From assembly GCF_902713615.1 (NCBI RefSeq), contig NC_052168.1:186001-250000 (forward strand): DNA of 64,000 nt. The letters run 5' to 3'. The stretch comes from Scyliorhinus canicula. Its lineage: Eukaryota. How positions within the stretch are numbered: the first letter of the stretch is position 1; each line of letters starts with the position of its first letter. The notes below the pieces were generated by a model. It did no database searches, was not told the DNA's origin, and saw only the letters and a program-made list of their open reading frames with translations. A program made the translations under genes and the position numbers. Positions 10,824 to 58,988 of this stretch are shown here, piece after piece.

Positions 10824-12490
10824 GACCTACAATGTTACACTGCCACCCGGTCACAGGCAAGGTCATGGACAATGTTACACTGTAACCCTGGACAGTGTTA
10901 CACTGTAACCCGGGACAATATTATTCAGTAACACTGGACAGTGTTACACTGTAACCCGGGATAGTGTTACACTGTAACCCGGGATAGTGTTACACTGTAA
11001 CCCTGGACAGTGTTACACTGTAACCCGGGACAATATTATTCAGTAACACTGGACAGTGTTACACTGTAACCCGGGATAGTGTTACACTGTAACCCGGGAT
11101 AGTGTTACACTGTAACCCTGGACAGTGTTACACTGTAACCCGGGACAATATTATTCAGTAACTCTGGACAGTGTTACACTGTAACCCGGGACAATATTAT
11201 TCAGTAACTCTGGACAGTGTTACACTGTAACCCGGGATAGTTTTACACTTTAACCCTGGACAGTGTTACACTGTAACCCGGGACAATATTATTCAGTAAC
11301 TCTGGACAGTGTTACACTGTAACCCGGGATAGTGTTACACTGTAACCCGGGATAGTGTTACACTGTAACCCTGGACAGTGTTACACTGTAACCCGGGACA
11401 ATATTATTCAGTAACTCTGGACAGTGTTACACTGTAACCCGGGATAGTTTTACACTTTAACTCGGGACAGAGACCAGGTTGTGGACAATGTTACACTGTA
11501 ACCCAGGACAATGTTATTTAGTAACCCTGGACAGTGTTATACTGTAACCCGGGACAGTGTTACTCTGTACCCTGGGACAGTGTTACACTGTAACCTTGGA
11601 TAATGTTACACTGTAACCCTGGACAATGTTACTGTGTACACTAGCCAATGTTACTCTGTAACCCGGGATAATGTTATTCTGTAACTCTGGACAGTGTTAC
11701 ACTGTAACCCGGGACAATGTTATTTAGTAACTCTGGACAGTGTTACACTGTAACCCGGGACAATGTTATTCTGTAACTCTGGACAGTGTTACACTGTAAC
11801 CCGGGACAATGTTATTTAGTAACTCTGGACAGTGTTACACTGTAACCCGGGACAATGTTATTTAGTAACTCTGGACAGTGTTACACTGTAACCCGGGACA
11901 ATGTTATACTGTAACCCTGGACAATGTTACTACTATATGTACACTAGCCAATGTTACTCTGTAACCCGGGATAATGTTATTCTGTAACCATGGACAGTGT
12001 TACACTGTAGCAAGGGACTGTGTAATCTGTAATCCGGGACAATGTTCCTCTGTAACCCTGTACAATGTTACACTGTAACCCTGGACATTGTTACTCTGCA
12101 TCCTGGGATAGTTTTACTCTGTAACTCTGGGCATGCGCAGTCTGTAATCCTGGACACTGTAACGCTGGACGATGTTACTCTGTACCCTGGGACAGTGTTA
12201 CACTGTAACCCTGGATAATGTTACACTGTAACTCGGGATAATGTTACACTGTAACCCTGGATAATGTTACACTGTAACTCGGGATAATGTTACACTGTAA
12301 CCCTGGATAATGTTACACTGTAACTCGGGATAATGTTACACTGTAACCCTGGATAATGTTACTCTGTACCCTGGGACAGTGTTACACTGTAACCCTGGCC
12401 AATGTTACTCTGTAAATCGGGACAGTGTTACACTGTAACCCGGGACAGTGTTATGGTGTAATCCGGGACAGTGTAACTCTAACCCGGTAT

Positions 12491-12815
12491 GGGCCTCACG
12501 GTAGCATGGTGGTTAGCATCAATGCTTCACAGCTCCAGGGTCCCAGGTTCGAGTCCCGGCTGGGTCACTGTCTGTGTGGAGTCTGCACGTCCTCCCCGTG
12601 TGTGCGTGGGTTTCCTCCGGGTGCTCCGGTTTCCTCCCACAGTCCAAAGATGTGCGGGTTAGGTGGATTGGCCATGCTAAATTGCCCGTAGTGTAAGGTT
12701 AATGGGTTAAGGGTATACGGGTTATGTGGGTTTAAGTAGGGTGATCATTGTTCGGCACAACATCGAGGGCTGAAGGGCCTGTTCTGTGCTGTACTGTTCT
12801 ATGTTCTATGTTCTA
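12491..12815 (+). mobile_element. Full-length V-SINE (HE1-like) with CR1-type tail
   Basis: tRNA-like A/B boxes (tagcatggtgg, ggttcgagtcc), V-domain gcgtgggtttcctccgggtgctccggtttcctccc, tail (tgttcta)n. Confidence 0.92.
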
Positions 12816-12863: not shown

Positions 12864-15830
12864 CGGGCTGGGGCGGGTCCGGGTTGGGCTGGGGTGGGGT
12901 CGGGTCGGGCTGGAGGCCGGGTGGGTTTGGGTTGGGCTGGGGTCCGGGTCAGAGGCCAGGTCTGGGTGGGTGGGGTCGGGGCTGGACTGGGGTCGGGGGT
13001 GGGCTGGAGGCCGGGTCGGGGCTGGGGTCCGGGTGGAGGCCGGGTTTGGGTCGGGGTCCGGGTGGGTTTGGGTCGGGGTCGGGGTCCGGGTAGGTTTGGG
13101 TCGGGGTCGGGGTCCGGGTGGGTTTGGGTCGGGGTCCGGGTCAAGGCCGGGTCCGGGTGGGTTGGGGTCGGGGTGGGTTGGGGTCGGGGTCCGGGTGGGG
13201 GCGAGGCCGGGTCCGGGTGGGTTAGGGTCGGGGGTCGGGGTCCGGGTCCGGGTGGATTGGGGTTGGGGGTCTGGGTCCGGGTGGATTGGGGTTGGGGGTC
13301 TGGGTCCGGGTGGAGGCCGGGTCGGGGTCTGGGTGGGTGGGTCCGGGTGGGTCTGGGTCGGGGTCCGGGTCGAGGCCGGGTGGGTTTGGGTCGGGGTCCG
13401 GGTGGGTTTGGGTCGGGTCCGGGTGGGTTTGGGCCGGGGTCCGTGTGGGTTTGGGTCGGGGTCCGTGTGGGTTTGGGTCGGGGTCCGGGTGGGTTTGGGT
13501 CGGGGTCCGGGTGGGTTTGGGTCGGGGTCCGGGTGGGTTTGGGTCGGGGTCCGGGTGGGTTTGGGTCGGGGTCCGGGTGGGTTTGGGTCGGGGTCCGTGT
13601 GGGTTTGGGTCGGGGTCCGGGTGGGTGTGGGTTTGGGTCGGGGTCCGGGTGGGTTTGGGTCGGGTCCGGGTGGGTTTGGGTGGAGACCGGGTCGGGGTCC
13701 GGGTGGGTTTGGGTGGAGACCGGGTCGGGGTCCGGGTGGATTAGGGTCGGGGTCCGGGTGGGTTTGGGTCCGGGTGGGTCTGGGTCGGGGTCCGGGTGGG
13801 TCTGGGTCGGGTCCGGGTGGGTTTGGGTGGAGGCCGGGTCGGGGTTTGGGTGGAGGCCGGGTCGGGGTCCGGGTGGGTTTGGGTGGAGGCCGGGTCGGGG
13901 TCCGGGTGGATTAGGGTTGGGGGTCGGGGTCCGGGTCTGGGTCCGGGTGGATTGGGGTTGGGGGTCTGGGTCCGGGTGGATTGGGGTTGGGGGTCGGGGT
14001 CCGGGTCTGGGTCCGGGTGGATTGGGGTTGGGGGTCTGGGTCCGGGTGGAGGCCGTGTCGGGGTCTGGGTGGGTGGGTCCGGGTGGGTTTGGGTCGGGTG
14101 GATTGGGGTTGGGGGTCTGGGTCCGGGTGGAGGCCGGGTCGGGGTCGGGGTGGGTTTGGGTCGGGGTCGGGGTCGGGGTGGGTTTGGGTCGGGGTCGGGG
14201 TCGGGGTCGATTAGGGTCGGGGTCCGGGTGGATTAGGGTCGGGGTCGGGGTGGATTAGGGTCGGGGTCGGGGTGGGTTTGGGTCGGGGTCCGGGTGGGGG
14301 GTGAGGGCGAGGCCGGGTCCGGGTGGGTTTGGGTCGGGGTCCGGGTGGATTAGGGTCGGGGTCGGGGTGGGTTTGGGTCGGGGTCCGGGTGGATTAGGGT
14401 CGGGGTCCGGGTGGATTAGGGTCGGGGTCCGGGTGGATTAGGGTCGGGGTCCGGGTGGATTAGGGTCGGGGTCCGGGTGGATTAGGGTCGGGGTCCGGGT
14501 GGATTAGGGTCGGGGTCCGGGTGGATTAGGGTCGGGGTCCGGGTGGATTAGGGTCGGGGTCCGGGTGGATTAGGGTCGGGGTCCGGGTGGATTAGGGTCG
14601 GGGTCCGGGTGGATTAGGGTCGGGGTCCGGGTGGATTAGGGTCGGGGTCCGGGTGGATTAGGGTCGGGGTCCGGGTGGATTAGGGTCGGGGTCCGGGTGG
14701 ATTAGGGTCGGGGTCCGGGTGGATTAGGGTCGGGGTCCGGGTGGATTAGGGTCGGGGTCGGGGTCCGGGTGGGGGGTGAGGGCGAGGCCGGGTCCGGGTG
14801 GGTTTGGGTCGGGGTCCGGGTCTGGGTGGGTCGAGGCCGGGTCGGGGTCCGGGTGGAGGCCGGGTTTGGGTGGGGGCTCGGGGTGGGGGGTGGAGGCCGG
14901 GTCCGGGTGGGTTTGGGTCGGGGTCCGGGTCTGGGTGGGTCGAGGCCGGGTCGGGGTCCGGGTGGAGGCCGGGTTTGGGTGGGGGCTCGGGGTGGGGGGT
15001 GGAGGCCGGGTCCCGGTGGGTGGGGGCGAGGCCGGGTCCCGGTGGGTGGGGGCGAGGCCGGGTCCCGGTGGGTGGGGGCGAGGCCGGGTCCCGGTGGGTG
15101 GGGGCGAGGCCGGGTCCCGGTGGGTGGGGGCGAGGCCGGGTCCCGGTGGGTGGGGGCGAGGCCGGGTCCCGGTGGGTGGGGGCGAGGCCGGGTCCCGGTG
15201 GGTGGGGGCGAGGCCGGGTCCGGGTTGGTTGGGGGTCGGGGGTCGGGGTGGAGGCCGGGTCGGGGTCCCGGTGGGTTTGGGTCGGGTTTGGGTCGGGGTG
15301 GGGGGTTGGGGGTCGGGGTCCGGGTGGAGGCCGGGTTTGGGTGGGGGCTCGGGGTGGGGGGTCGGGGCGAAGCCGGGTCGGGGTGGGTTGGGGTCGGGGT
15401 GGAGGCCGGGTCCGGGTTGGTTGGGGGTCGGGGGTCGGGGTGGAGGCCGGGTCGGGGTCCCGGTGGGTTTGGGTCGGGGTGGGGGGTTGGGGGTCGGGGT
15501 CCGGGTGGAGGCCGGGTTTGGGTGGGGGCTCGGGGTGGGGGGTCGGGGCGAAGCCGGGTCCGGGTGGGTTGGAGTCGGGGGTCGGGGTGGAGGCCGGGTC
15601 CGGGTTGGTTGGGGGTCGGGGTCCGGGTGGGGGCTCGGGGTGGGGGGTCGGGGCGAAGCCGGGTCCGGGTGGGTTGGAGTCGGGGGTCGGGGTGGAGGCC
15701 GGGTCCGGGTTGGTTGGGGGTCGGGGTCCGGGTGGGGGCTCGGGGTGGGGGGTTGGGGGTCGGGGGTCGGGGTGGAGGCCGGGTCCGGGTGGGTTGGGGT
15801 CGGGGTTTGGGGGTCGGGGTCCGGGTGGAT
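12864..15830. repeat. 3-kb G-rich compound minisatellite including a homogeneous 22-bp unit ggattagggtcggggtccgggt (~14381-14752)
   Basis: Almost pure G/T/C strand with G3-4 runs; explains all ORFs in 12786-15896. Confidence 0.95.
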
Positions 15831-17123: not shown

Positions 17124-17310
17124 AGCAATTTAGCATGGCCAATCCACCTAACCTGCACATCTTTGGACTGTGGGAGGAAACCGGAGCACCTGGAGGAAAC
17201 CCACATAGACACAGGGAGAACGTGCAGACTCCGCATCGATAGTGACCCAAGCCGGGAATCGAACCTGGGACCATGGCGCTGTGAAGCAACAGTGCTAACC
17301 ACTGTGCAAC
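17124..17310 (-). mobile_element. V-SINE copy
   Basis: Reverse complement of head and V-domain. Confidence 0.88.
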
Positions 17311-19764: not shown

Positions 19765-19985
19765 TGGGCCATTCTGCACTGACCCTCTGAAAGAGCTCCC
19801 TACTTTGACCACTCCCCTAGCCCCATAATGTTACCCAACCTACACACCTTTGGACTGTGGGAGGAATCTGGAGCACCTGGTAGACACCCATTTCAACAGC
19901 TGGAGAACATGCAAATTCCACATTCACCCAAGGGCAGAATTGAATCTGGCTCCCTGGCACAGTGAGGCAGCAATGCTAACAGCTT
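19765..19985 (-). mobile_element. Old V-SINE copy
   Basis: ctttggactgtgggaggaa..ggagcacc core. Confidence 0.7.
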
Positions 19986-20149: not shown

Positions 20150-20420
20150 GGGCAGCACTGTTACTTCACAGCTCCAGGGACCCACATTCAATTCCCGGGT
20201 TGGCTCACTGTGAAATCTGCATGTTCTCCCCATGTCTGCGTGGGTTTCCTCCGGGTGCTCCGGTTTCCTCCCACAAGTCCCGAAAGATGTGCTGTTAGGT
20301 GAATTGGCCATTCTGAATTCTCCCTCTGTGTACCCGAACAGGAATGTGGCGACTAGGGGCTTTTCACAGTAACTTCATTGCACTGTTAATGTAAGCCTAC
20401 TTGTGACACTAATAAAGATC
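20150..20420 (+). mobile_element. V-SINE variant with alternative 3' tail
   Basis: V-domain followed by cccgaacaggaatgtggcgactaggggcttttcacagtaacttc..gcctacttgtgac tail. Confidence 0.85.
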
Positions 20421-20812
20421 TATAAATTGAGCATCTCATTAATAATAATATTAATAAAAAAGTGTGGAATGAGTAATGGTCAGTACTTGACTCAGTTTGT
20501 GACAATACTCAGTATCTAGGTTCACCACCCCCACAATGAAACAACTAAAATCTGGAGCAACCATGGCTGGACTATGAAACTCCATTTCATTAGAAAGTAC
20601 ATTTTTCACAGTCTGGAGAGAAATGGCGATTTGGGATGATTCCAACCTTGAATTACAGCCCGAATTGTGCATCCATTAACTTAGTAACAGGCAGAGGGGC
20701 AAAATAAATGAAGCTAAAAGCAAAAAACACATGAGCTTCCAGTCAAGCCGTGTGGCATCGAGTCAGGTTAATAGGCACAATATCAACAACTGATCTAGTC
20801 CAATAAAAGTAT

Positions 20813-20955
20813 TTATTTCCATCTGACAGTCATAGTGATAGCAAAGCCAAACAGGAGAGAAAGTGTCACTACCAGGAGCACAGTGATCACAACCATATTG
20901 CCAGATCGCATTCCAGCATCCCAAACATGGATAGAAAGATAGCTTGGAGGGTCAT
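20813..20955 (-). CDS. Uroplakin-2/3-family gene, exon 5 (TM helix and stop)
   Basis: Acceptor ttctctttctgcag; DPPSYLSIHVWDAGMRSGNMVVITVLLVVTLSLLFGFAITMTVRWK*, matching the uroplakin juxtamembrane motif R(S/T)GxM(I/V)VIT. Confidence 0.9.
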
Positions 20956-21168
20956 CTGCAGAAAGAGAACACAAAGGTTTAGTTGGTGCTCAGGATGCAT
21001 AGAACAAAAGAGACCAGAATTTGGGCAAAGGTTTCCTTCAGCCACTTTCACAATACAAAAATCAAATTTTGGCAGGTCAAAGTGAAAACCTTTTCCCATC
21101 TTTAGTGACAGAATATTCTTTGGGATCAACTTTATTCGGGAACACAAAATTTGGAGCTGCCAACTTGC

Positions 21169-21245
21169 CTCTAGTTGTTATGGATTCAGACCATCGAGTC
21201 ATCACCAGGGGGTTTGCAGAAGAGTCTAAAACAACGTAACGCACC
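21169..21245 (-). CDS. Uroplakin-2/3-family gene, exon 4 (77 bp, GC donor)
   Basis: Acceptor gtcttttcag; RVRYVVLDSSANPLVMTRWSESITTR (UPK3-type YRVK..TxWSxPI); donor AG|gcaagt gives the required phase 1. Confidence 0.87.
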
Positions 21246-22101
21246 CTGAAAAGACAGTGGAATTTAGTGAAGACAAAGCTTTACTGCACTCATTGAAATA
21301 AATCAAATGAAATCCAAGAATAACCAAAATCATGAACTCCTTTAAATTTTGTAGTAAAAGACCACATCATCACTAGTGAGTTGGAAAGTTTCTTACTGGC
21401 CGTTTAAAGAATTGTTCAATAAGAGAGGAGGGGTTTGGCTTGTGGAGAGAGAGATTCAGTTTAGGCCAATAGTTCAGAGGAGGAGATCTAATTGAGGGAT
21501 CCAAGCTGAGGAAAGATATTGACAAGTAGACAGAGCAGACACTGCCTCTGGTGGGGAAATCTAGATGAGATCATCGGATAAGTGGGAAAACAAGAGATAA
21601 GAAATTCCTTTTCCCCAAACAGTCAGGAATCTGTGGAATTCACCACCCAAGTGCAGTAGGTGCATTTGAGGAGACCGATTTTTAATTAGTGAATTGAAGG
21701 GCTTATCAGGTGTGATCATATTGTATGGCACAGCAGAGTTGGTGACTCCTTCTTAAAAGGGCCATTTGATCCTAATTCTACTCTGGGGAGACAGGGTGGG
21801 GCCCACCAGCCCCATTTCTCACTGATGGTGGCTTTCTCCAGCACAAACAGACCATTCAACCCATCGATCCAGGCTGTTCTTTATCCTCCAGTCTCAATTC
21901 TCACCACGGTTAAAATTAGAGGTATTTGCCATTTAATTTCTTGGTGACCGTCTTGCATTGATGATCTTTAGTTATGGTCTTCCTCACAAAAAGGAAGATC
22001 TGTATCCACCATCAAAACCTTCCAACTTGGCAGCAAACTTTGCATCTGTCAGATGTGTGAAGAGGGTTCACAGCAGGTTTTTCAGCTTTGGAGATACCTA
22101 C

Positions 22102-22255
22102 CTGAAGCTCTGCCCTGGCAACACATGTTCAATGCAGCTTCCATTCTTGCACGCAATGCTAGGTCCCATCCGATAGGCCAATTCTGTTGGCTCGGGAGAG
22201 AAGTCGGTGCAAGGGGGTACAGAGTACTTCTGGGTCAAAACAAAAGTGCCATTAT
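22102..22255 (-). CDS. Uroplakin-2/3-family gene, exon 3 (154 bp)
   Basis: Acceptor tttctttcgcag, donor gtaggt; DNGTFVLTQKYSVPPCTDFSPEPTELAYRMGPSIACKNGSCIEHVLPGQSFR. Confidence 0.87.
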
Positions 22256-22743
22256 CTGCGAAAGAAAGTGGAATCGGTTAATTTTGTTAATATGGCACCT
22301 CAGGTAAGGTGAAGTGATTGAACCTCATCTTAATGTTTAGTTTTGACCGCAATGTTAAGAGGGAAAAGTGAGCCACGGGTTAATAACACATCAATCCAGG
22401 ACCAAGTTAAATAATATCAGCTGTACAAAGGACCAGATCTCACATTAATAGGGCATCTGTTCCAAGCTCACCTTAGCATAAAAGCAAGTAGTTTTTGGTG
22501 CCAATTTACTCAATCCTTTACAAGCACCAGGAATACACATTCTTCAAAGAATCCAACAGTAAAGAAACTCCCACCTTCTCTACTCTGGATCTTATTATAT
22601 TGCTTACAAGAACACATCAGTTTTGTTATTTAATCCGATAGTTTGGGATTGAGAGAATGAATTGAGCACAAGAATATCTGGGTATAGGTGACGTCATTCA
22701 GATTTGAGGTATTAAATGTTTCAGAAGCTTAAAGCAACCTCAC

Positions 22744-22905
22744 CTCCTCTTAAAATCTCCACAGTAATGGATGCAGAGGCTGGGGGAGTGGCTATTTGGT
22801 CAGCTCTCCGTACAGCCCACATTTCAAACAGACAGTGGGCAGGTTGCAGCCAAACCAGTGTAGCAAGTCGTGACAAATCACCATTGCAAAGCACAATATT
22901 GTAAT
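22744..22905 (-). CDS. Uroplakin-2/3-family gene, exon 2 (162 bp)
   Basis: Acceptor ttttatttcag, donor gtgagg; DYNIVLCNGDLSRLATLVWLQPAHCLFEMWAVRRADQIATPPASASITVEILRG. Confidence 0.85.
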
Positions 22906-24557
22906 CTGAAATAAAATGGTAGAATATCCAAGTGAAAGCAGAGATACTACTCAGGGTCTAACAAGACGGATATATTTAGGCAAGGTGCAAACGCTGCTAA
23001 ACAAGTACATGGACCACTAAATGGGAGACACCCAAATACTTAACATTTACAGGATTAACCAAGACACTAAACTTCTGCCAATGTAGAAAGTGCAGTGTTA
23101 CAATCCTTGCAGAGATTAACATTTAAGAGAAATTATGAAGCTACAAGGTTCCAATACATTAATTTTACAATTCTAATATCAAGTAAAATGAACACCACCA
23201 AGTAATTACTTCTATTCTACATCAATGAAACAATTTATATTTTGCAAACTTCTCAACTGAACCTTGTAGAAACACACTATTCCCCACTCAATAAATTATT
23301 TTCTGTTCCTCGCTGGATTCAGGGCCCAACACCTACACCCACCAATTTAGCTTTTGTTCGAAAACTTCAAGCTTCCCCTTACTAAAACTGCTCAACCAGA
23401 GAACATTAAAAAAAGCCACAAAAGAACAGTTCCTGAAAATTACCACCGTGATAATGTGGCCAACCCATCATATTCCAAACAGACATTTAAATTATCTTTA
23501 ACCTTCAAACACCCCCTTTGATTGTGACCCATGTAAATAATTGCTCCATTGGCATTAACAGCCTGTTTTCCAAGATTATTAGTCCCACTAAGCAACTCCC
23601 TTGTTTACAACACAACTTAACAATTTTTCATCCGAGAATAGTTTAACTCTGGGACAAGTGACGATCTCCTGGATCAACAAAAAGTTCAGAGATGATCTAG
23701 TTATTGTTGAAGTTCATTCCTTTCCAATTCTGGCCAATAACAAATGCAGGGCACCCTTTGAACTGCCACTACTTGAAATTCAGCAGTTCCTGAAGTCCAG
23801 CATTTTAATTACCTAACCCATTCACATTTAATTTTGCCAAAACTAAATAGAACCTTGAACAGAATATAAATCATGAAATATTTGACAGCAATAAATTTGC
23901 ACTTTTGACAGATCCACAAATAGAAGAGATGATCATTTATTCCATTTTGATGTTGGCCGAGGGACAACAATTAACTAGGATGTTAATCACATACCCCCAT
24001 TCTTCAAATAGTGAGATGGGTTCCTTTACAAATCACTTCAAGGACTAGGAACAGCCTCATTTAACATCTAATCCAATCAGTGCAGAGGAGCCAGCCTAGA
24101 TTATGCACTGCAGTCTCTCAAACAGGGGTCGAGTTCATGATCATGAACTCATGAGGTCTTTGTCCTCAGATATTAAATATGTTTCGTCAGTCAAGGGCCA
24201 AAAATAAATAAATAGGATTCTCAGGTGGGAGTTATTTTCTGAGGTGTCTTTCTGATTTTTAGGGTTTTCCCTCCAGAATTTCAATTTAGGTCAGATGATA
24301 TCACTAGGTGATTCATAACTAAGAATAATTCAGTGGAAAGTTCTTGCTAAGAACTCCCAGGCCAAGGTTACAGAGGGGTGAATGATCATAGTCAGGACCT
24401 ATAAATCCTTCCCACACTCAGCCCTTCTCATACAAAATACTTCATGACTAAAGAAGCAAAATATGATAATTGAAATGTAAATTTTAGATCAAACATCTGT
24501 CAGCAGCTTCACAAGTTCAGTCTATGGCTTTGTACCCCGTTGTCAAATGCTTCTTAC

Positions 24558-24633
24558 CTACAAGAAGTTGTGAATGACAAGAATAGAAAAGCATTATCAA
24601 TCCAGTCAGCCTCCTGGAAGATTCCATCATCAT
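24558..24633 (-). CDS. Uroplakin-2/3-family gene, exon 1 (signal peptide)
   Basis: MMMESSRRLTGLIMLFYSCHSQLLV, phase-1 donor G|gtaaga; all five exons join to 612 nt = 203 aa + stop. Confidence 0.78.
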
Positions 24634-24789: not shown

Positions 24790-25510
24790 GGGCGAGATTC
24801 TCCCAAAACGGGAGAAATCGTAAAGCTGCCGTAAAACCCGGGCGGGTTTTACGGCAGCGCGCCCCTTCCCGACGGGGGACCTATTCTGGTCCCCGGTCGG
24901 GGCTAGCAGCCCGACGCCGTAGGCTCCGGCAAGACGGGCTTAACGAAAATCGTTAAGCCCGCTTGCCGGAGTTAGCGCCGGCTGACGCGTCATATGACGT
25001 CAGCCGCGCATGCGCAGTTTGGAAGACTCAAACCCGCGCATGCGTGGGTGACGTCATCGCGTTTTTGCGCGAAACCCGCGCATGCGCGGGCCGGGTTGCC
25101 CCTCAGCCGCCCCACGAATGGATACTGCGGGGCGGCGGAAGGACAAGTAGTGCGCGGGCATCGGGCCCGCTGCCCGCGATCGGTGGGCACCGATCGCGGG
25201 CCCATGGCACCCTTGGCACGGCCATGGTACGGCCGTGCCAATCGGTGCCATGGTTATTAATAGCGAGTTTGTGACGCCGGTTTTACGAACGGCAAGACCA
25301 GGTGTGTTTGCCGTTCGTAAAAACGGCGGAAAGGGCTGGGACTTCGGCCCATCTAACAGCTGAGAATCGCTGCCGGCCGTAAAAAAACAGCGGCAGCGAT
25401 TCGGGTCGGGACTTCGGCGGGGGGTGGAGAATAGCGGGAGGGCGGCAAAAATGTCGGGAAGGCCCTCCCGCTATTCTCCCACCCGTCGTGGGGGGCGGAG
25501 AATTTCGCCC
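24790..25510. mobile_element. GC-rich non-autonomous DNA transposon (MITE), Harbinger-like
   Basis: TIRs gggcgagattctcc / ggagaatttcgccc, 3-bp TSD CCG, internal palindromes. Confidence 0.88.
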
Positions 25511-25717: not shown

Positions 25718-26022
25718 CATAGAACATAGAACATACAGTGCAGAAGGAGGCCATTCGACCCATCTAGTCTGCACCGACCCACTTAAACCCTCACTTCCAC
25801 CCTATCCCTGTAACCCACTAACCCATCTAACTTTTTTTGGTCACTAAGGGCACTTTAGCATGGACAAACCAACTAACCTGCACATCTTTGGACTGTGGGG
25901 GGAAACCCACGCAGACACGGGGAGAACGAGCAGACTCCGCACAGAGACCCAGCGGGGAATCAAACCTGGGACCCTGGTGCTGTGAAGCCACAGTGATAAT
26001 CACTTGTGCTACCGTGCTGCCC
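25718..26022 (-). mobile_element. V-SINE with CR1-type tail
   Basis: catagaacatagaac tail and reverse-complement head. Confidence 0.88.
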
Positions 26023-27219: not shown

Positions 27220-32790
<5,571 letters not shown>

Positions 32791-41779: not shown

Positions 41780-42596
41780 CGCAAGCGCACACACCTGCCC
41801 CAGACGTGTGCAAAAATGAATAAAACTTTAGAGTTTCAAATGTTAAAATTTAGCTAAGTAAAATAAAGATAAAGTTATTTTTAAAACCTTCAGCGATTGT
41901 CTGAAACTCGTTCCACCCAGAGATCACTTTCCCTGGTGGCTAACTATTGGCTGAATCTCTTTTCACTTGAACACAGTTGGAATCCTCCTTTAAGAACTCT
42001 GTGCAGCAATGAATTCCTCTGGTGGTTTCAAACCACAAACAGGGCTCAGTTTTGTTGAGAGAAGTTTTGGGCGAGGGGAATGGGGGGGGGGGGGGGGGGG
42101 TCAATCAGGTTGTTATCCGCACTGTCTTTGTGGCAGTTTCTGTCTGTTTATATTTTACAAGAGCCGGGTCACGTGGCCTTTCTCTGGCTTCAGTCTGGGA
42201 TTTATTTTAACCACTGTCTCTGAGAGCCCCATTGACCCCGGACACGATCTGACAGCCGCGCTGTACCCGTTGTGGATCCGAGTTAGATCAAGGAGTGGGT
42301 GAAAGCAGGATCGGCATCGAGCAGCGATTAGCTTCCTGTGTAACCGGCCCGCTCCTGTTGGCGAGATCCGGATGCCAGTACCAATAATCTCCGATTAAAG
42401 CCAATCTCATATTGTTAACGGGAAGGCCCCCCTCTCTAATGGCCTCGCGTGTTCTAACCGTATCCCCAGCGAGAGGTCACGTGGACACCCTTTAACACCC
42501 CTACTTAAAAATGTGAAGCTAGTGAAATGGCTGCTGTGGGGTTTGGAGGAGGTGAGTAATCAGCTTCGAACCCAGACATCAGCACTGGGGCTGCTG

Positions 42597-44350
42597 GGGG
42601 GGTAATGGGCCCGGTGTGGGGAGGGGGGGGGGGTAACAGGCCCGGTGTGGGGAGGGGGGGGAAACAGGCCCGGTGTGGGGAGGGGGGTAACAGGCCCGGT
42701 GTGGGGAGGGGGGGGTAACAGGCCTGGTGTGGGGAGGGGGGGTAACGGGCCCGGTGTGGGGAGGGGGGGGTAACGGGCCCGGTGTGGGGAGGGGGGGGTA
42801 ACAGGCCCGGTGTGGGGAGGGGGGGTAACGGGCCCGGTGAGGGGAGGGGGGGGTAACAGGCCCGGTGTGGGGAGGGGGGGTAACGGGCCCGGTGAGGGGA
42901 GGGGGGGGGTAACAGGCCCGGTGTGGGGAGGGGGGGTAACGGGCCCGGTGAGGGGAGGGGGGGGTAACAGGCCCGGTGTGGGGAGGGGGGGTAACGGGCC
43001 CGGTGTGGGGAGGGGGGGGTAACAGGCCCGGTGTGGGGAGGGGGTGGTCTCTGCTGGGCTGGGGGTTAATGGGCCCGGTGTGGGGAGGGGAGGGGTCTCT
43101 GCTGGGCTGGGGGGTAACAGCCCCAGTGTGGGGAGGGGGAGGTCGCTGTTGGGCCGGGGGGGTAATGGGCCCGGTGTGGGGAGGGGGGGTAACAGGCCCG
43201 GTGTGGGGAGGGGGGTAACAGGCCCGGTGTGGGGAGGGGGGGTAACAGGCCCGGTGTGGGGAGGGGGTGGTCGCTGCTGGGCCGGGGGGTAATGGGCCCG
43301 GTGTGGGGAGGGGGGGTAACAGGCCCGGTGTGGGGAGGGGGGGGTAACAGGCCCGGTGTGGGGAGGGGGGGGTAACAGGCCCGGTGTAGGGAGGGGGTGG
43401 TCGCTGCTGGTCTGGGGGGGTAATGGGCCCGGTGTGGGGAGGGGGAGGTTGCTGTTGGGCTGCGGGGTAATGGGCCCGGTGTGGGGAGGGGGGGGTAACA
43501 GGCCCGGTGTGGGGATGGGGGGGTAACAGGCCCGGTGTAGGGAGGGGGTGGTCGCTGCTGGTCTGGGGGGGTAATGGGCCCGGTGTGGGGAGGGGGAGGT
43601 CACTGCTGGGCTGGGGGGGTAACAGGCCCGGTGTAGGGAGGGGGGGTAATGGGCCCGGTGTGGGGAGGGGGGGGTCACTGCTGGGCTGGGGGGGTAACAG
43701 GCCCGGTGTAGGGAGGGGGGGTAATGGGCCCGGTGTGGGGAGGGGGGGGTCACTGCTGGGCTGGGGGGGTAACAGGCCCGGTGTGGGGAGGGGGGGGTAA
43801 CAGGCCCGGTGTGGGGAGGGGGTGGTCGCTGCTGGTCTGGGGGGGTAATGGGCCCGGTGTGGGGAGGGGGTGGTCGCTGCTGGGCTGGGGGGTAACAGCC
43901 CCGGTGTGGGGGGGGGGTGGTCTCTGCTGGGCTGGGGGGTAATGGGCCCGGTGTGGGGAGGGGGGGGGGGGGTAATGGGCCCGGTGTGGGGAGGGGGGGT
44001 GGTCTCTGCTGGGCTGGGGGGTAATGGGCCCGGTGTGGGGAGGGGGGGGTAACAGGCCCGGTGTGGGGAGGGGGAGGTCGCTGTTGGGCTGGGGGGTAAC
44101 AGCCCCGGTGTGGGGAGGGGGTGGTCGCTGTTGGGCTGGGGGGTAACAGCCCCGGTGTGGGGAGGGGGAGGTCGCTGCTGGGCTGGGGGGTAACGGGCCC
44201 GGTGTGGGGAGGGGGGGGTAACAGGCCCGGTGTGGGGAGGGGGAGGTCGCTGCTGGTCTGGGGGGGTAATGGGCCCCGTGTGGGGAGGGGGAGGTCGCTG
44301 TTGGGCCAGGGGGTAATGGGCCCGGTGTGGAGAGGGGGTTATGGGCTGGG
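42597..44350. repeat. G-rich ~28-bp minisatellite taacaggcccggtgtggggag(g)n with a longer variant unit
   Basis: Directly visible. Confidence 0.93.
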
Positions 44351-55151: not shown

Positions 55152-55617
55152 TTCCCTACCTAGATCCTGGAAAACTGGAAATTTGCTGGGACTGGCAGGA
55201 GGTAAACAAATGGAGAACAGTTTACAGCTGGTCCCAGGTTGGGACCCATCTGGCTCCTTGCATGATTGGATCATTGAGATGATGTCATCATTTCCCATAC
55301 TCAGAGAACTCCCAGACTCCTGGTGGATTCCCGCTTTAAGAAGACGAGGTTGGTTTGCAAAATTCCCAATAGATTCCAGAAATCATGATGGTCAATCACA
55401 CACAGCACTTATGGATGGTGCAGGTCTGACCAGGGTTACCCTGGGCAAAAGCTGGTCATCTGATTGGCTGGAACCAAGCACCAATGAAGAAGTCAAGAGA
55501 AGCATTGTTGTGGCTGATGATGTCGCTTTTCGAGAAAAGAGCAAGTTCCTGACTGCGATGCAGAGGCAGAAATGGCTGAACTCTGTGATGAGAAAACTTG
55601 TGATTAACAAAAAGTAG
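55152..55617 (+). CDS. PTH2: PTH2 (TIP39) precursor, last coding exon; mature 38-aa peptide at 55501-55614
   Basis: KR|SIVVADDVAFREKSKFLTAMQRQKWLNSVMRKLVINKK* matches the TIP39 signature ADDxAFRE..WLNSxM; acceptor tattgtag at 55151. Confidence 0.96.
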
Positions 55618-57356: not shown

Positions 57357-58988
57357 CTGGGGGGGGGGATAGATTACCCTGGCCATGGGCGGGGGGGGGG
57401 ATAGATTACCCTGGCCATGGGGGGGGGATAGATTACCCTGGCCATGGGGGGGGGGGGATAGATTACCCTGGCCATGGGGAGGGGGGGGGATAGATTACCC
57501 TGGCCATGGGGGGGGGGGGATAGATTACCCTGGCCATGGGGGGGGGGGATAGATTACCCTGGCCATGGGGAGGGGGGGGGATAGATTTCCCTGGCCATGG
57601 GGGGGGGGGGGGAATAGATTACCCTGGCCATGGGGGGGGGGGGGGGATAGATTACCCTGGCCATGGGCGGGGGGGGGATAGATTACCCTGGCCATGGGGA
57701 GGGGGGGGGGGATAGATTTCCCTGGCCATGGGGGGGGGGGGGGGGGGAATAGATTACCCTGGCCATGGGGGGGGGGGGGGGATAGATTACCCTGGCCATG
57801 GGGGGGGGGGTAGATTACCCTGGCCATTGTGGGGGGGGGATAGATTACCCTGGCCATGGGGGGGGGGGGGATAGATTACCCTGGCCATGGGGGGGGGGTG
57901 GGGGGGATCGATTACCCTGGCCATGGGGGGGGGGATAGATTACCCTGGCCATGGGGGGGGGGGGGGGGGGGGGGATCGATTACCCTGGCCATGGGGGGGG
58001 GATAGATTACCCTGGCCATGGGGGGGGGGGGGGGGAGATAGATTACCCTGGTCATGGGGGGGAGATAGATTACCCTGGCCATGGGGGGGAGATAGATTAC
58101 CCTGGCCATGGGAGGGGGGGGGGGGGGATAGATTACCCTGGCCATGGGGGGGGGAGAGATTACCCTGGCCATGGGGGGGGGGGGGGGTAGATTACCCTGG
58201 CCATGGGGGGGAGATAGATTACCCTGGCCATGGGGGGGGGGGGGGGATAGATTACCCTGGCCATGGGCGGGGGGGTGGGATAGATTACCCTGGCCATGGG
58301 GGGGGGGGGGGATAGATTACCCTGGCCATGGGGAGGGGGGGGGGGGATAGATTTCCCTGGCCATGGGGGGGGGGGGGGGGAATAGATTACCCTGGCCATG
58401 GGGGGGGGGGGGGGATAGATTACCCTGGCCATGGGGGGGGGGGGGTAGATTACCCTGGCCATTGCGGGGGGGGGATAGATTACCCTGGCCATGGGGGGGG
58501 GGGGGGGGGGATAGATTACCCTGGCCATGGGGGGGGGGGGGGGGGGATCGATTACCCTGGCCATGGGGGGGGGATAGATTACCCTGGCCATGGGGGGGGG
58601 GGGTGGGGGGGATCGATTACCCTGGCCATGGGGGGGGGATAGATTACCCTGGCCATGGGGGGGGGGGGGGGAGATAGATTACCCTGGTCATGGGGGGGAG
58701 ATAGATTACCCTGGCCATGGGGGGGAGATAGATTACCCTGGCCATGGGAGGGGGGGGGGGGGATAGATTACCCTGGCCATGGGGGGAGATAGATTACCCT
58801 GGCCATGGGGGGGGGGGGGGGATAGATTACCCTGGCCATGGGGGGGAGATAGATTACCCTGGCCATGGGGGGTGGGGGTAGATAGATTACCCTGGCCATG
58901 GGGGGGGGGGGATAGATTACCCTGGCCATGGGGGGGGGGGGGGGGGGGATAGATTACCCCGGCCATGGGCGGGGGGGGGGGGGATAGA
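57357..58988. repeat. Minisatellite with constant core atagattaccctggccat and variable poly-G linkers (roughly 55 units)
   Basis: Directly visible; a single inverted unit lies at ~56436-56492. Confidence 0.93.

What the first reader, a model, noticed from the sequence alone, without database searches (positions are those of the whole stretch)
20813..24633. Hidden 5-exon uroplakin with a UPK3-like ectodomain and a UPK2-like tail-less membrane anchor
Seen: five exons with consistent phases join to 203 aa (signal peptide; DYNI..LQPAHCLF; VPPC; YRMGPSIAC-KNGSC; RVRYVV..TRWSESI; RSGNMVVITVLL TM; RWK stop). None appears in the ORF track. Known: UPK2 has VPPC followed by a furin site (RGRR), MVVITVLL and no cytoplasmic tail; UPK3 proteins have the extra Cys loop, the WSxPI motif and a tail. 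This protein has the UPK3 loop and WS motif, the UPK2 anchor, no tail and no furin site. Inference: it is an intermediate paralog (possibly the poorly studied UPK2b-type). In a urea-retaining fish without a mammalian-type urothelium it is a candidate component of a urea/water barrier in gill, skin or nephron.
Basis: partly seen in the sequence, partly recalled or inferred. Interest (0 to 1): 0.8.

Follow-up and report, generated by a model that had tools for sequence, protein, structure and literature searches.

The report
Catshark tail-less uroplakin (published "shark UPK2b")
The five exons are real, spliced and expressed, but they encode a catshark gene that RefSeq already holds unnamed and that is the counterpart of the "shark UPK2b" uroplakin described in 2014, so the finding is correct but largely known.

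Summary
Observation confirmed. On the minus strand, five exons with intron phases 1,1,2,1 join to 203 aa. Transcript contigs confirm all four junctions, including a GC-AG intron 4.

The protein is 100% identical to RefSeq XP_038639830.1, "uncharacterized protein LOC119956582" of Scyliorhinus canicula. It is therefore hidden only from a prokaryote-style ORF track.

It belongs to the UPK2/3 family by profile, fold, cysteine pattern and intron phases. It is 59% identical to the Callorhinchus sequence published as "UPK2b.Shark" (DeSalle 2014). That paper and Chicote 2017 already describe UPK2b as tail-less, with four cysteines in reptile and bird members.

So the "intermediate paralog" is a described kind.

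One twist is worth follow-up. The tetrapod relatives I found (caecilians, frogs, lizard, crocodile, turtles) sit next to PTH2 and GFY, in what I recall as the human 19q13.33 gene set. They lack the motifs that I read in the six tetrapod "UPK2b" sequences of that paper, and Xenopus laevis has both kinds. The shark gene may therefore belong to an unrecognised orthogroup.

The urea-barrier idea is untested. Orthologs also occur in animals that do not retain urea.

The parts
24558..24633 (-). Exon 1, coding part: start codon at 24633 and the signal peptide. It ends in phase 1 with donor GTAAGA.
   Evidence: The joint 22905|24558 is seen in the X2 contig with 28 nt on the short side.
22744..22905 (-). 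Exon 2 (162 nt): DYNIVLCNG...LQPAHC (cysteine C1 = C50)...ILRG. Ends in phase 1.
   Evidence: The joint 22255|22744 is seen in X1, X2 and X4.
22809..22809 (-). R58Q polymorphism. The reference reads CGG (R); all three transcript data sets read CAG (Q), which is the residue in other cartilaginous fishes.
22102..22255 (-). Exon 3 (154 nt): N81 glycosylation sequon, VPPC (C2 = C95) with no furin motif after it, and the C115-KNGS-C120 loop (C3-C4, with sequon N117). Ends in phase 2.
   Evidence: The joint 21244|22101 is seen in X1 and X2.
21169..21245 (-). Exon 4 (77 nt): RVRYVV...TRWSESITTR. Ends in phase 1 and is followed by a GC donor (bases 21168-21167).
   Evidence: The joint 20955|21169 has ends CT..GC on the + strand in X1 and X2. 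Exon 4 is 77 nt in all five orthologs mapped.
20813..20955 (-). Exon 5, coding part: juxtamembrane stretch, RSGNMVVITVLL transmembrane helix, then RWK and the stop. There is no cytoplasmic-tail exon.
   Evidence: The hydropathy peak is at residues 177-200. The AlphaFold2 model has a helix at 167-202.
20400..20812 (-). 3' UTR, at least this long; the contigs run on past 20400.
   Evidence: Records 1 and 6 lie continuously from 20400 and 20472 respectively up to 20955.
55468..55605 (+). PTH2 (TIP39) peptide exon, head-to-head with the uroplakin gene. It serves as a synteny anchor.
   Evidence: tblastx with the turtle TIP39 gene gives 67% identity. A TIP39 gene lies just upstream on the opposite strand in Emydura and Rhinatrema.

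Best explanation
This is the small-spotted catshark ortholog of the gene published as shark UPK2b. It encodes a single-pass type I membrane glycoprotein of the tetraspanin-associated UPK2/3 family. The parts are a signal peptide, one long FN3-like ectodomain with two cysteine pairs (C50/C95 and C115/C120) and two N-glycosylation sequons, a conserved RSG-MVVITVLL transmembrane helix, and only three cytoplasmic residues.

Shown here: the gene is intact, spliced, transcribed in only a few of the listed transcriptome-like data sets, under purifying selection, and conserved at one locus (PTH2 - UPK - GYS/GFY) from chimaera to reptiles.

Inferred from the family: like UPK2 and UPK3, it probably pairs in the ER with a UPK1 tetraspanin through its ectodomain and transmembrane helix, and reaches an apical membrane as a heterodimer. 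It has no R-x-K/R-R site after C2, so it should not undergo the furin prosequence cleavage that matures UPK2a. It has no tail, so it cannot signal as UPK3a does.
For: Gene model and splicing.

Identity to XP_038639830.1 of S. canicula.

Family membership:
- The profile of 14 orthologs hits the porcine uroplakin complex chains, UPK2 8jj5_B at E 5e-12 and UPK3A 8jj5_C at E 1.5e-10.
- The 13 best Swiss-Prot AlphaFold matches of the model (pLDDT 81) are all uroplakins.
- The two best PDB fold matches are 8jj5_C and 8jj5_B.
- Intron phases 1,1,2,1 equal the family pattern stated in PMC5242461.

Orthology to the published shark UPK2b:
- P0002 reads as the same sequence as the one printed in the supplement of PMC3922775, apart from a few letters.
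- P0002 is 59% identical to the catshark protein.
- A glycogen synthase gene follows on the same strand in Scyliorhinus, Callorhinchus and Pristis.

Constraint: dN/dS is 0.14-0.31. The same five-exon structure, with a 77-nt exon 4, is found in five other species.

Expression: k-mer depth is 357 in X1. The 3' exon is held well in only 3 of the 20 contig-indexed runs listed for this species.
Against: - Pfam Uroplakin_II scores the catshark protein below its gathering threshold (17.2 against 20.4 bits).
- No partner tetraspanin was examined.
- The expressing tissue is unknown.
- The runs are only guessed to be RNA, although contigs that lack the introns argue for it.
- The start codon and 5' end rest on one contig with 28 nt of overlap.
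- The X1 contig instead continues from exon 2 into a dispersed repeat.
Confidence: 0.85

Rival explanations
1. The shark gene and its PTH2-linked tetrapod relatives form a separate, unnamed UPK2/3 orthogroup. In that case the 2014 grouping of the shark sequence with the tetrapod UPK2b sequences would be a mis-assignment. This refines the best explanation rather than excluding it.
For: - A whole-library phmmer search with catshark exon 3 alone found, outside cartilaginous fishes, only caecilian 'uroplakin-2-like' proteins and one unnamed fragment. No UPK2a, UPK3 or paper-type UPK2b appeared.
- Profile searches then brought in frogs, a lizard, a crocodile and turtles at E 1e-90 to 1e-31.
- None of the 18 members carries GYQVG, CNQ or VNF. 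I read these motifs in the six tetrapod UPK2b sequences printed in the paper.
- Members with C3 and C4 have them spaced C-x4-C. By my reading the paper's lizard sequence has C-x7-C.
- No member has a basic motif after C2.
- X. laevis P0017 clearly differs from the paper's UPK2b.Xlaevis.
- PTH2 lies head-to-head with the gene in catshark, turtle and caecilian.
Against: - I compared the paper's sequences only by eye and by short motifs. They could not be loaded as references, so there is no joint tree.
- The two tetrapod genes could be duplicates that are both co-orthologous to the shark gene.
- The word-indexed searches can miss distant relatives.
Confidence: 0.55
2. One reading: this is a previously uncharacterised intermediate paralog that adapts a urea-retaining fish, acting as a urea/water barrier component in gill, skin or nephron.
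For: - The feature mosaic is real.
- Expression appears restricted to few samples.
- No paper mentions LOC119956582.
Against: - The paralog type and its features are published.
- Orthologs occur in frogs, caecilians, turtles, a crocodile and a lizard.
- No tissue or permeability data could be obtained.
Confidence: 0.1
3. The locus is a decaying or non-functional copy: a transcribed pseudogene.
For: - Intron 4 has a non-canonical GC donor.
- Pfam scores the protein below threshold.
- There is an extra unpaired cysteine, C32, found only in the catshark.
Against: - The reading frame is intact.
- The GC donor is used in two independent data sets.
- dN/dS is 0.14-0.31.
- Exon sizes and phases are conserved.
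- Transcript depth is high.
Confidence: 0.03

Closest known systems
UPK2b as defined by DeSalle et al. 2014 (PMC3922775) and Chicote et al. 2017 (PMC5242461)
   Same: It has no cytoplasmic-tail exon, four conserved ectodomain cysteines and intron phases 1,1,2,1. The group is reported from shark, amphibians and reptiles but not from mammals. The paper's shark member is the direct ortholog (59% identity, with the same glycogen synthase neighbour).
   Different: The paper's six tetrapod members, as I read them, carry GYQVG, a C-x7-C loop ending in CNQ, RVNFF and a basic R-x-x-R after C2. The catshark protein and its tetrapod orthologs have none of these motifs, and those that keep C3-C4 have C-x4-C instead.
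UPK2 / UPK2a (mammalian uroplakin II; PDB 8jj5 chain B)
   Same: It has a signal peptide, a D-[FY]-N-I start to the mature chain, VPPC, the GxMVVITVLL anchor and no tail. This is the best profile hit (48.6 bits).
   Different: UPK2a has a furin site directly after C2 (RFKR in lungfish P0032; RGRR in the 8jj5_B alignment) and lacks C3-C4. The catshark protein has no furin site and keeps C3-C4. Pfam Uroplakin_II gives 87.7 bits to lungfish UPK2a but only 17.2 bits here.
UPK3a / UPK3b (PDB 8jj5 chain C)
   Same: It has the C3-C4 loop, YR[FV][KR]YV strand, the WS-x-x-I motif and an RSG-M-[IV]VIT anchor. Language-model features place it nearest the uroplakin-3b, uroplakin-3a and UPK3L clusters. Phmmer with the single sequence prefers UPK3A.
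   Different: UPK3 proteins have a sixth exon that encodes a cytoplasmic tail and are 250-290 aa long. This protein stops three residues after the transmembrane helix and its C3-C4 loop is much shorter.

Membership tests
UPK2/3 tetraspanin-associated uroplakin family | Type I topology: a signal peptide, one ectodomain, and a single transmembrane helix near the C-terminus | tested here: met
   There is a hydrophobic N-terminus, the hydropathy peak is at residues 177-200, and the AlphaFold2 model has helices at 6-17 and 167-202.
UPK2/3 tetraspanin-associated uroplakin family | Conserved intron positions with phases 1,1,2,1 (PMC5242461) | tested here: met
   Phases were worked out and the junctions are seen in transcripts. 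Five orthologs have the same phases.
UPK2/3 tetraspanin-associated uroplakin family | Significant sequence similarity to established uroplakins | tested here: met
   The ortholog profile hits 8jj5_B at E 5e-12 and 8jj5_C at E 1.5e-10. The single sequence reaches only E 1.5e-4 and 0.042, and Pfam scores it below threshold.
UPK2/3 tetraspanin-associated uroplakin family | FN3-like ectodomain fold shared with UPK2 and UPK3 | tested here: met
   The top 13 Swiss-Prot AlphaFold hits are all uroplakins and FN3 domains follow them. 8jj5_C and 8jj5_B are the top PDB hits.
UPK2/3 tetraspanin-associated uroplakin family | Heterodimer with a UPK1a or UPK1b tetraspanin, needed for ER exit | not tested
UPK2a | Furin cleavage motif directly after C2, with C3-C4 absent | tested here: not met
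   None of the 18 orthologs has R-x-[KR]-R, and the catshark protein has C115 and C120.
UPK3 (a-d) | Cytoplasmic tail encoded by an extra exon after a phase-2 intron | tested here: not met
   The stop comes three codons after the transmembrane helix within exon 5, and the transcript continues unspliced into the 3' UTR.
UPK2b (2014 definition) | Tail-less with C1-C4, and orthologous to the published shark member | tested here: met
   
UPK2b (2014 definition) | Shares the sequence signature of the published tetrapod members (GYQVG, CNQ, VNFF, basic site after C2) | tested here: not met
   A motif scan found 0 of 18 members with these motifs. The paper's sequences were read. No joint tree could be built.

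The most novel reading that the evidence does not exclude
Jawed vertebrates may have a seventh, unnamed UPK2/3 orthogroup. Its members are tail-less and furin-less and lie between PTH2 and GFY/GYS1, a gene set that I recall as human 19q13.33. It is present in chimaera, sharks, a sawfish, amphibians and non-avian reptiles. No mammal, bird or teleost member turned up in my searches. The published 'shark UPK2b' would belong to this group rather than to tetrapod UPK2b.
Probability: 0.5. Interest if true: 0.45.

Novelty: new member of a known kind. Interest (0 to 1): 0.3.

Why it matters
The catshark gene itself adds little. It gives a name to an unnamed RefSeq locus and confirms its model with transcripts, including a working GC-AG intron.

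The useful by-product concerns uroplakin evolution. The PTH2-linked locus ties the shark gene to a set of amphibian and reptile genes that databases name inconsistently: uroplakin-2, uroplakin-2-like, Uroplakin 3B, uncharacterized, and even GFY through read-through models. By my reading of the printed sequences, these genes are not the tetrapod UPK2b of the literature. If that holds, the accepted six-group scheme of UPK2/3 proteins, and the inferred order of tail loss, furin-site gain and cysteine-pair loss, would need revision.

Tried and rejected
- Exon-by-exon Pfam and PDB searches gave almost nothing. Only exon 5 touched Uroplakin_II, at E 0.0095.
- I did not type the joined protein. Its identical database twin P0010 was used as the reference instead.
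- An alternative model for exons 4 and 5 (GT donor after 21090 with an acceptor before 20942) was considered. It was rejected because the transcripts use 21169|20955.
- All three word-indexed homolog searches failed to return mammalian UPK2a, any UPK3 or the paper-type UPK2b. Only lungfish UPK2a (P0032) came in, so no family-wide tree could be built.
- The tree of the orthogroup rooted on that one very long outgroup branch is not reliably rooted.
- A tblastn search for GFY in the window with the caecilian GFY part found nothing significant.
- Raw-read run X6 showed no reads on the gene. This is not evidence of silence.
- Searches for the locus name, for catshark uroplakin papers and for supplements of the catshark genome paper returned nothing.
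- No earlier scan note mentions uroplakins.
Full report
**Observation.**
The reverse strand of 20813-24633 carries five open segments with good splice signals. The exons are 24633-24558, 22905-22744, 22255-22102, 21245-21169 and 20955-20813. Joined, they give 612 nt, which is 203 codons plus the stop. The intron phases are 1,1,2,1.

Introns 1-3 are GT-AG. Intron 4 begins with GC inside an AG|GCAAGT context. No NGT codon lies in exon 4's reading frame before its in-frame stop, so no GT donor gives the needed phase (my reading).

**Transcripts.**
Four runs of this species held about 8-13% of the sampled words of the 4-kb stretch, which is roughly the exonic share. I laid these runs on the window.
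- Contigs of X1 (k-mer depth 357) and X2 (depth 59), from two studies, skip exactly 20956-21168, 21245-22100 and 22256-22743.
- X2 also skips 22906-24557.
- X4, from a third study, shows the 22255|22744 joint.

The GC-AG intron is therefore used. The contigs continue unspliced from the stop to beyond 20400, so the 3' UTR is longer than 420 nt and there is no sixth (tail) exon.

A search with the last exon and UTR alone found it well held in only 3 of the 20 contig-indexed runs listed for this species, from 2 samples. This suggests tissue-restricted expression. Run metadata were coded, so the tissue is unknown.

All three data sets read Q (CAG) at codon 58 where the reference has R (CGG). Q is also the residue in other cartilaginous fishes.

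**Identity.**
A whole-library phmmer search with exon 3 and a follow-up search led to P0010. P0010 is 203/203 identical to the joined protein. It is XP_038639830.1, "uncharacterized protein LOC119956582" of Scyliorhinus canicula, and the gene spans exactly 3821 bases on assembly GCA_902713615.2. The gene is therefore annotated, although unnamed.

**Family.**
- The catshark sequence alone is a weak match: Pfam Uroplakin_II 17.2 bits against a cut-off of 20.4, and PDB UPK3A at E 1.5e-4 and UPK2 at E 0.042.
- A profile of 14 orthologs hits the porcine uroplakin complex clearly: UPK2 chain 8jj5_B at E 5e-12 and UPK3A chain 8jj5_C at E 1.5e-10.
- An AlphaFold2 model (pLDDT 81) has uroplakins as its 13 best Swiss-Prot matches, with UPK2 and UPK3b tied and generic FN3 domains after them. 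Its two best PDB matches are 8jj5_C and 8jj5_B.
- Language-model features put it next to UPK3b, UPK3a and UPK3L clusters.
- The intron phases equal the family signature 1,1,2,1(2) given by Chicote et al. 2017.

**Comparison with what is published.**
DeSalle et al. [quoted passage not shown] Chicote et al. 2017 state that UPK2a and UPK2b lack the cytoplasmic tail, and that UPK2b of reptiles and birds keeps all four cysteines.

The supplement prints "UPK2b.Shark" from Callorhinchus WGS and ESTs. That sequence reads as P0002 apart from a few letters, and P0002 is 59% identical to the catshark protein.

In Scyliorhinus, Callorhinchus and Pristis the gene is followed on the same strand by a glycogen synthase gene.

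**A discrepancy worth noting.**
The non-chondrichthyan relatives recovered are caecilians, nine frogs, Pogona, Crocodylus and two turtles.
- They share DY-I-LY...SRLSTLLWLRPAYC, VP-C without a basic site, and VLPG-SYRVRYVLYN.
- Reptile and cartilaginous-fish members have a C-x4-C loop. Amphibians have lost it.
- None of the 18 members has the GYQVG, CNQ or VNF motifs. I read these motifs in the six tetrapod UPK2b sequences of the 2014 supplement.
- Xenopus laevis P0017 is plainly a different gene from the paper's UPK2b.Xlaevis.

Microsynteny ties the shark gene to this tetrapod set.
- PTH2 (TIP39) lies head-to-head upstream in catshark (55468-55605 on the + strand), in Emydura and in Rhinatrema.
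- GFY lies downstream in Xenopus as a Mucin15-like neighbour, and is fused to the gene in Geotrypetes read-through models.
- Crocodylus shows an adaptin, FLT3LG-like and Ras-type neighbours.
- By my recollection these genes correspond to the human 19q13.33 gene set (PTH2, GFY, GYS1, AP2A1, FLT3LG).

All orthologs mapped have five exons, phases 1,1,2,1 and a 77-nt exon 4. Only the catshark uses a GC donor. dN/dS is 0.14-0.31. In the orthogroup tree the cartilaginous fishes form a 100/100 clade, but the root is unreliable.

I could not load the paper's sequences as references. The claim that this is a separate orthogroup therefore rests on motifs, on reading the printed sequences, and on synteny, not on a joint tree.

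**Mechanism.**
Shown: an intact, spliced, constrained gene for a signal-anchored FN3-like glycoprotein without a tail or a furin site.

Inferred from the family: it pairs with a UPK1 tetraspanin in the ER and is delivered to an apical membrane, without the furin prosequence cleavage that matures UPK2a, and without UPK3-type tail signalling.

The urea-barrier proposal is untested. It is not favoured, because orthologs are present in animals that do not retain urea.

**Verdict.**
Interest is low to moderate. The possible extra orthogroup is the only part worth follow-up.

Noticed in passing
window 22809: The reference has R58 (CGG). All three transcript data sets read Q58 (CAG), which matches other cartilaginous fishes. 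The reference animal probably carries a derived allele.
   Followed up: partly
window 12632-12654 (-), 17156-17178 (+), 19843-19865 (+), 25881-25903 (+): These are copies of a dispersed repeat. The X1 transcript contig leaves exon 2 at 22908 and runs into this repeat. That is either a chimeric contig end or a repeat-derived alternative 5' exon, and the 23 loose letters seen add no start codon in the gene's reading frame.
   Followed up: partly
window 24790-24900: This stretch, just upstream of the start codon, is covered in every run laid, including raw reads on both strands. It looks like an expressed repeat rather than the gene's 5' UTR.
   Followed up: no
window 55468-55605 (+): This is the PTH2/TIP39 mature-peptide exon (KRSIVVADDVAFREKSKFLTAMQRQKWLNS...). 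It is divergent from the uroplakin gene, an arrangement shared with a turtle and a caecilian.
   Followed up: partly
window 1 to about 12519 (-): A glycogen synthase gene lies downstream on the same strand, as it does in Callorhinchus and Pristis.
   Followed up: partly
window 27326-32781; 12989-15826; 10866-12487; 42596-44247; 57359-58981: These are large tandem arrays: a 5.4-kb (AGTGCC)n array, a G-rich GGGGTC-type array, and 23-mer and 27-mer satellites. They account for the GC and skew spikes in the composition profile.
   Followed up: no
P0007, P0012, P0015 (Geotrypetes seraphini): RefSeq 'Golgi-associated olfactory signaling regulator' isoforms start with uroplakin exons 1-4 and continue into GFY. 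They are read-through gene models that hide the uroplakin gene.
   Followed up: partly
window 21167-21168: The GC donor of intron 4 is specific to the catshark. Callorhinchus, Pristis, Emydura, Crocodylus and X. laevis all have GT at the same site.
   Followed up: yes
P0010 residue 32: The catshark has an extra ectodomain cysteine (C32, in VLCNG) where orthologs have Y or F. This leaves an odd number of cysteines in the mature chain.
   Followed up: no
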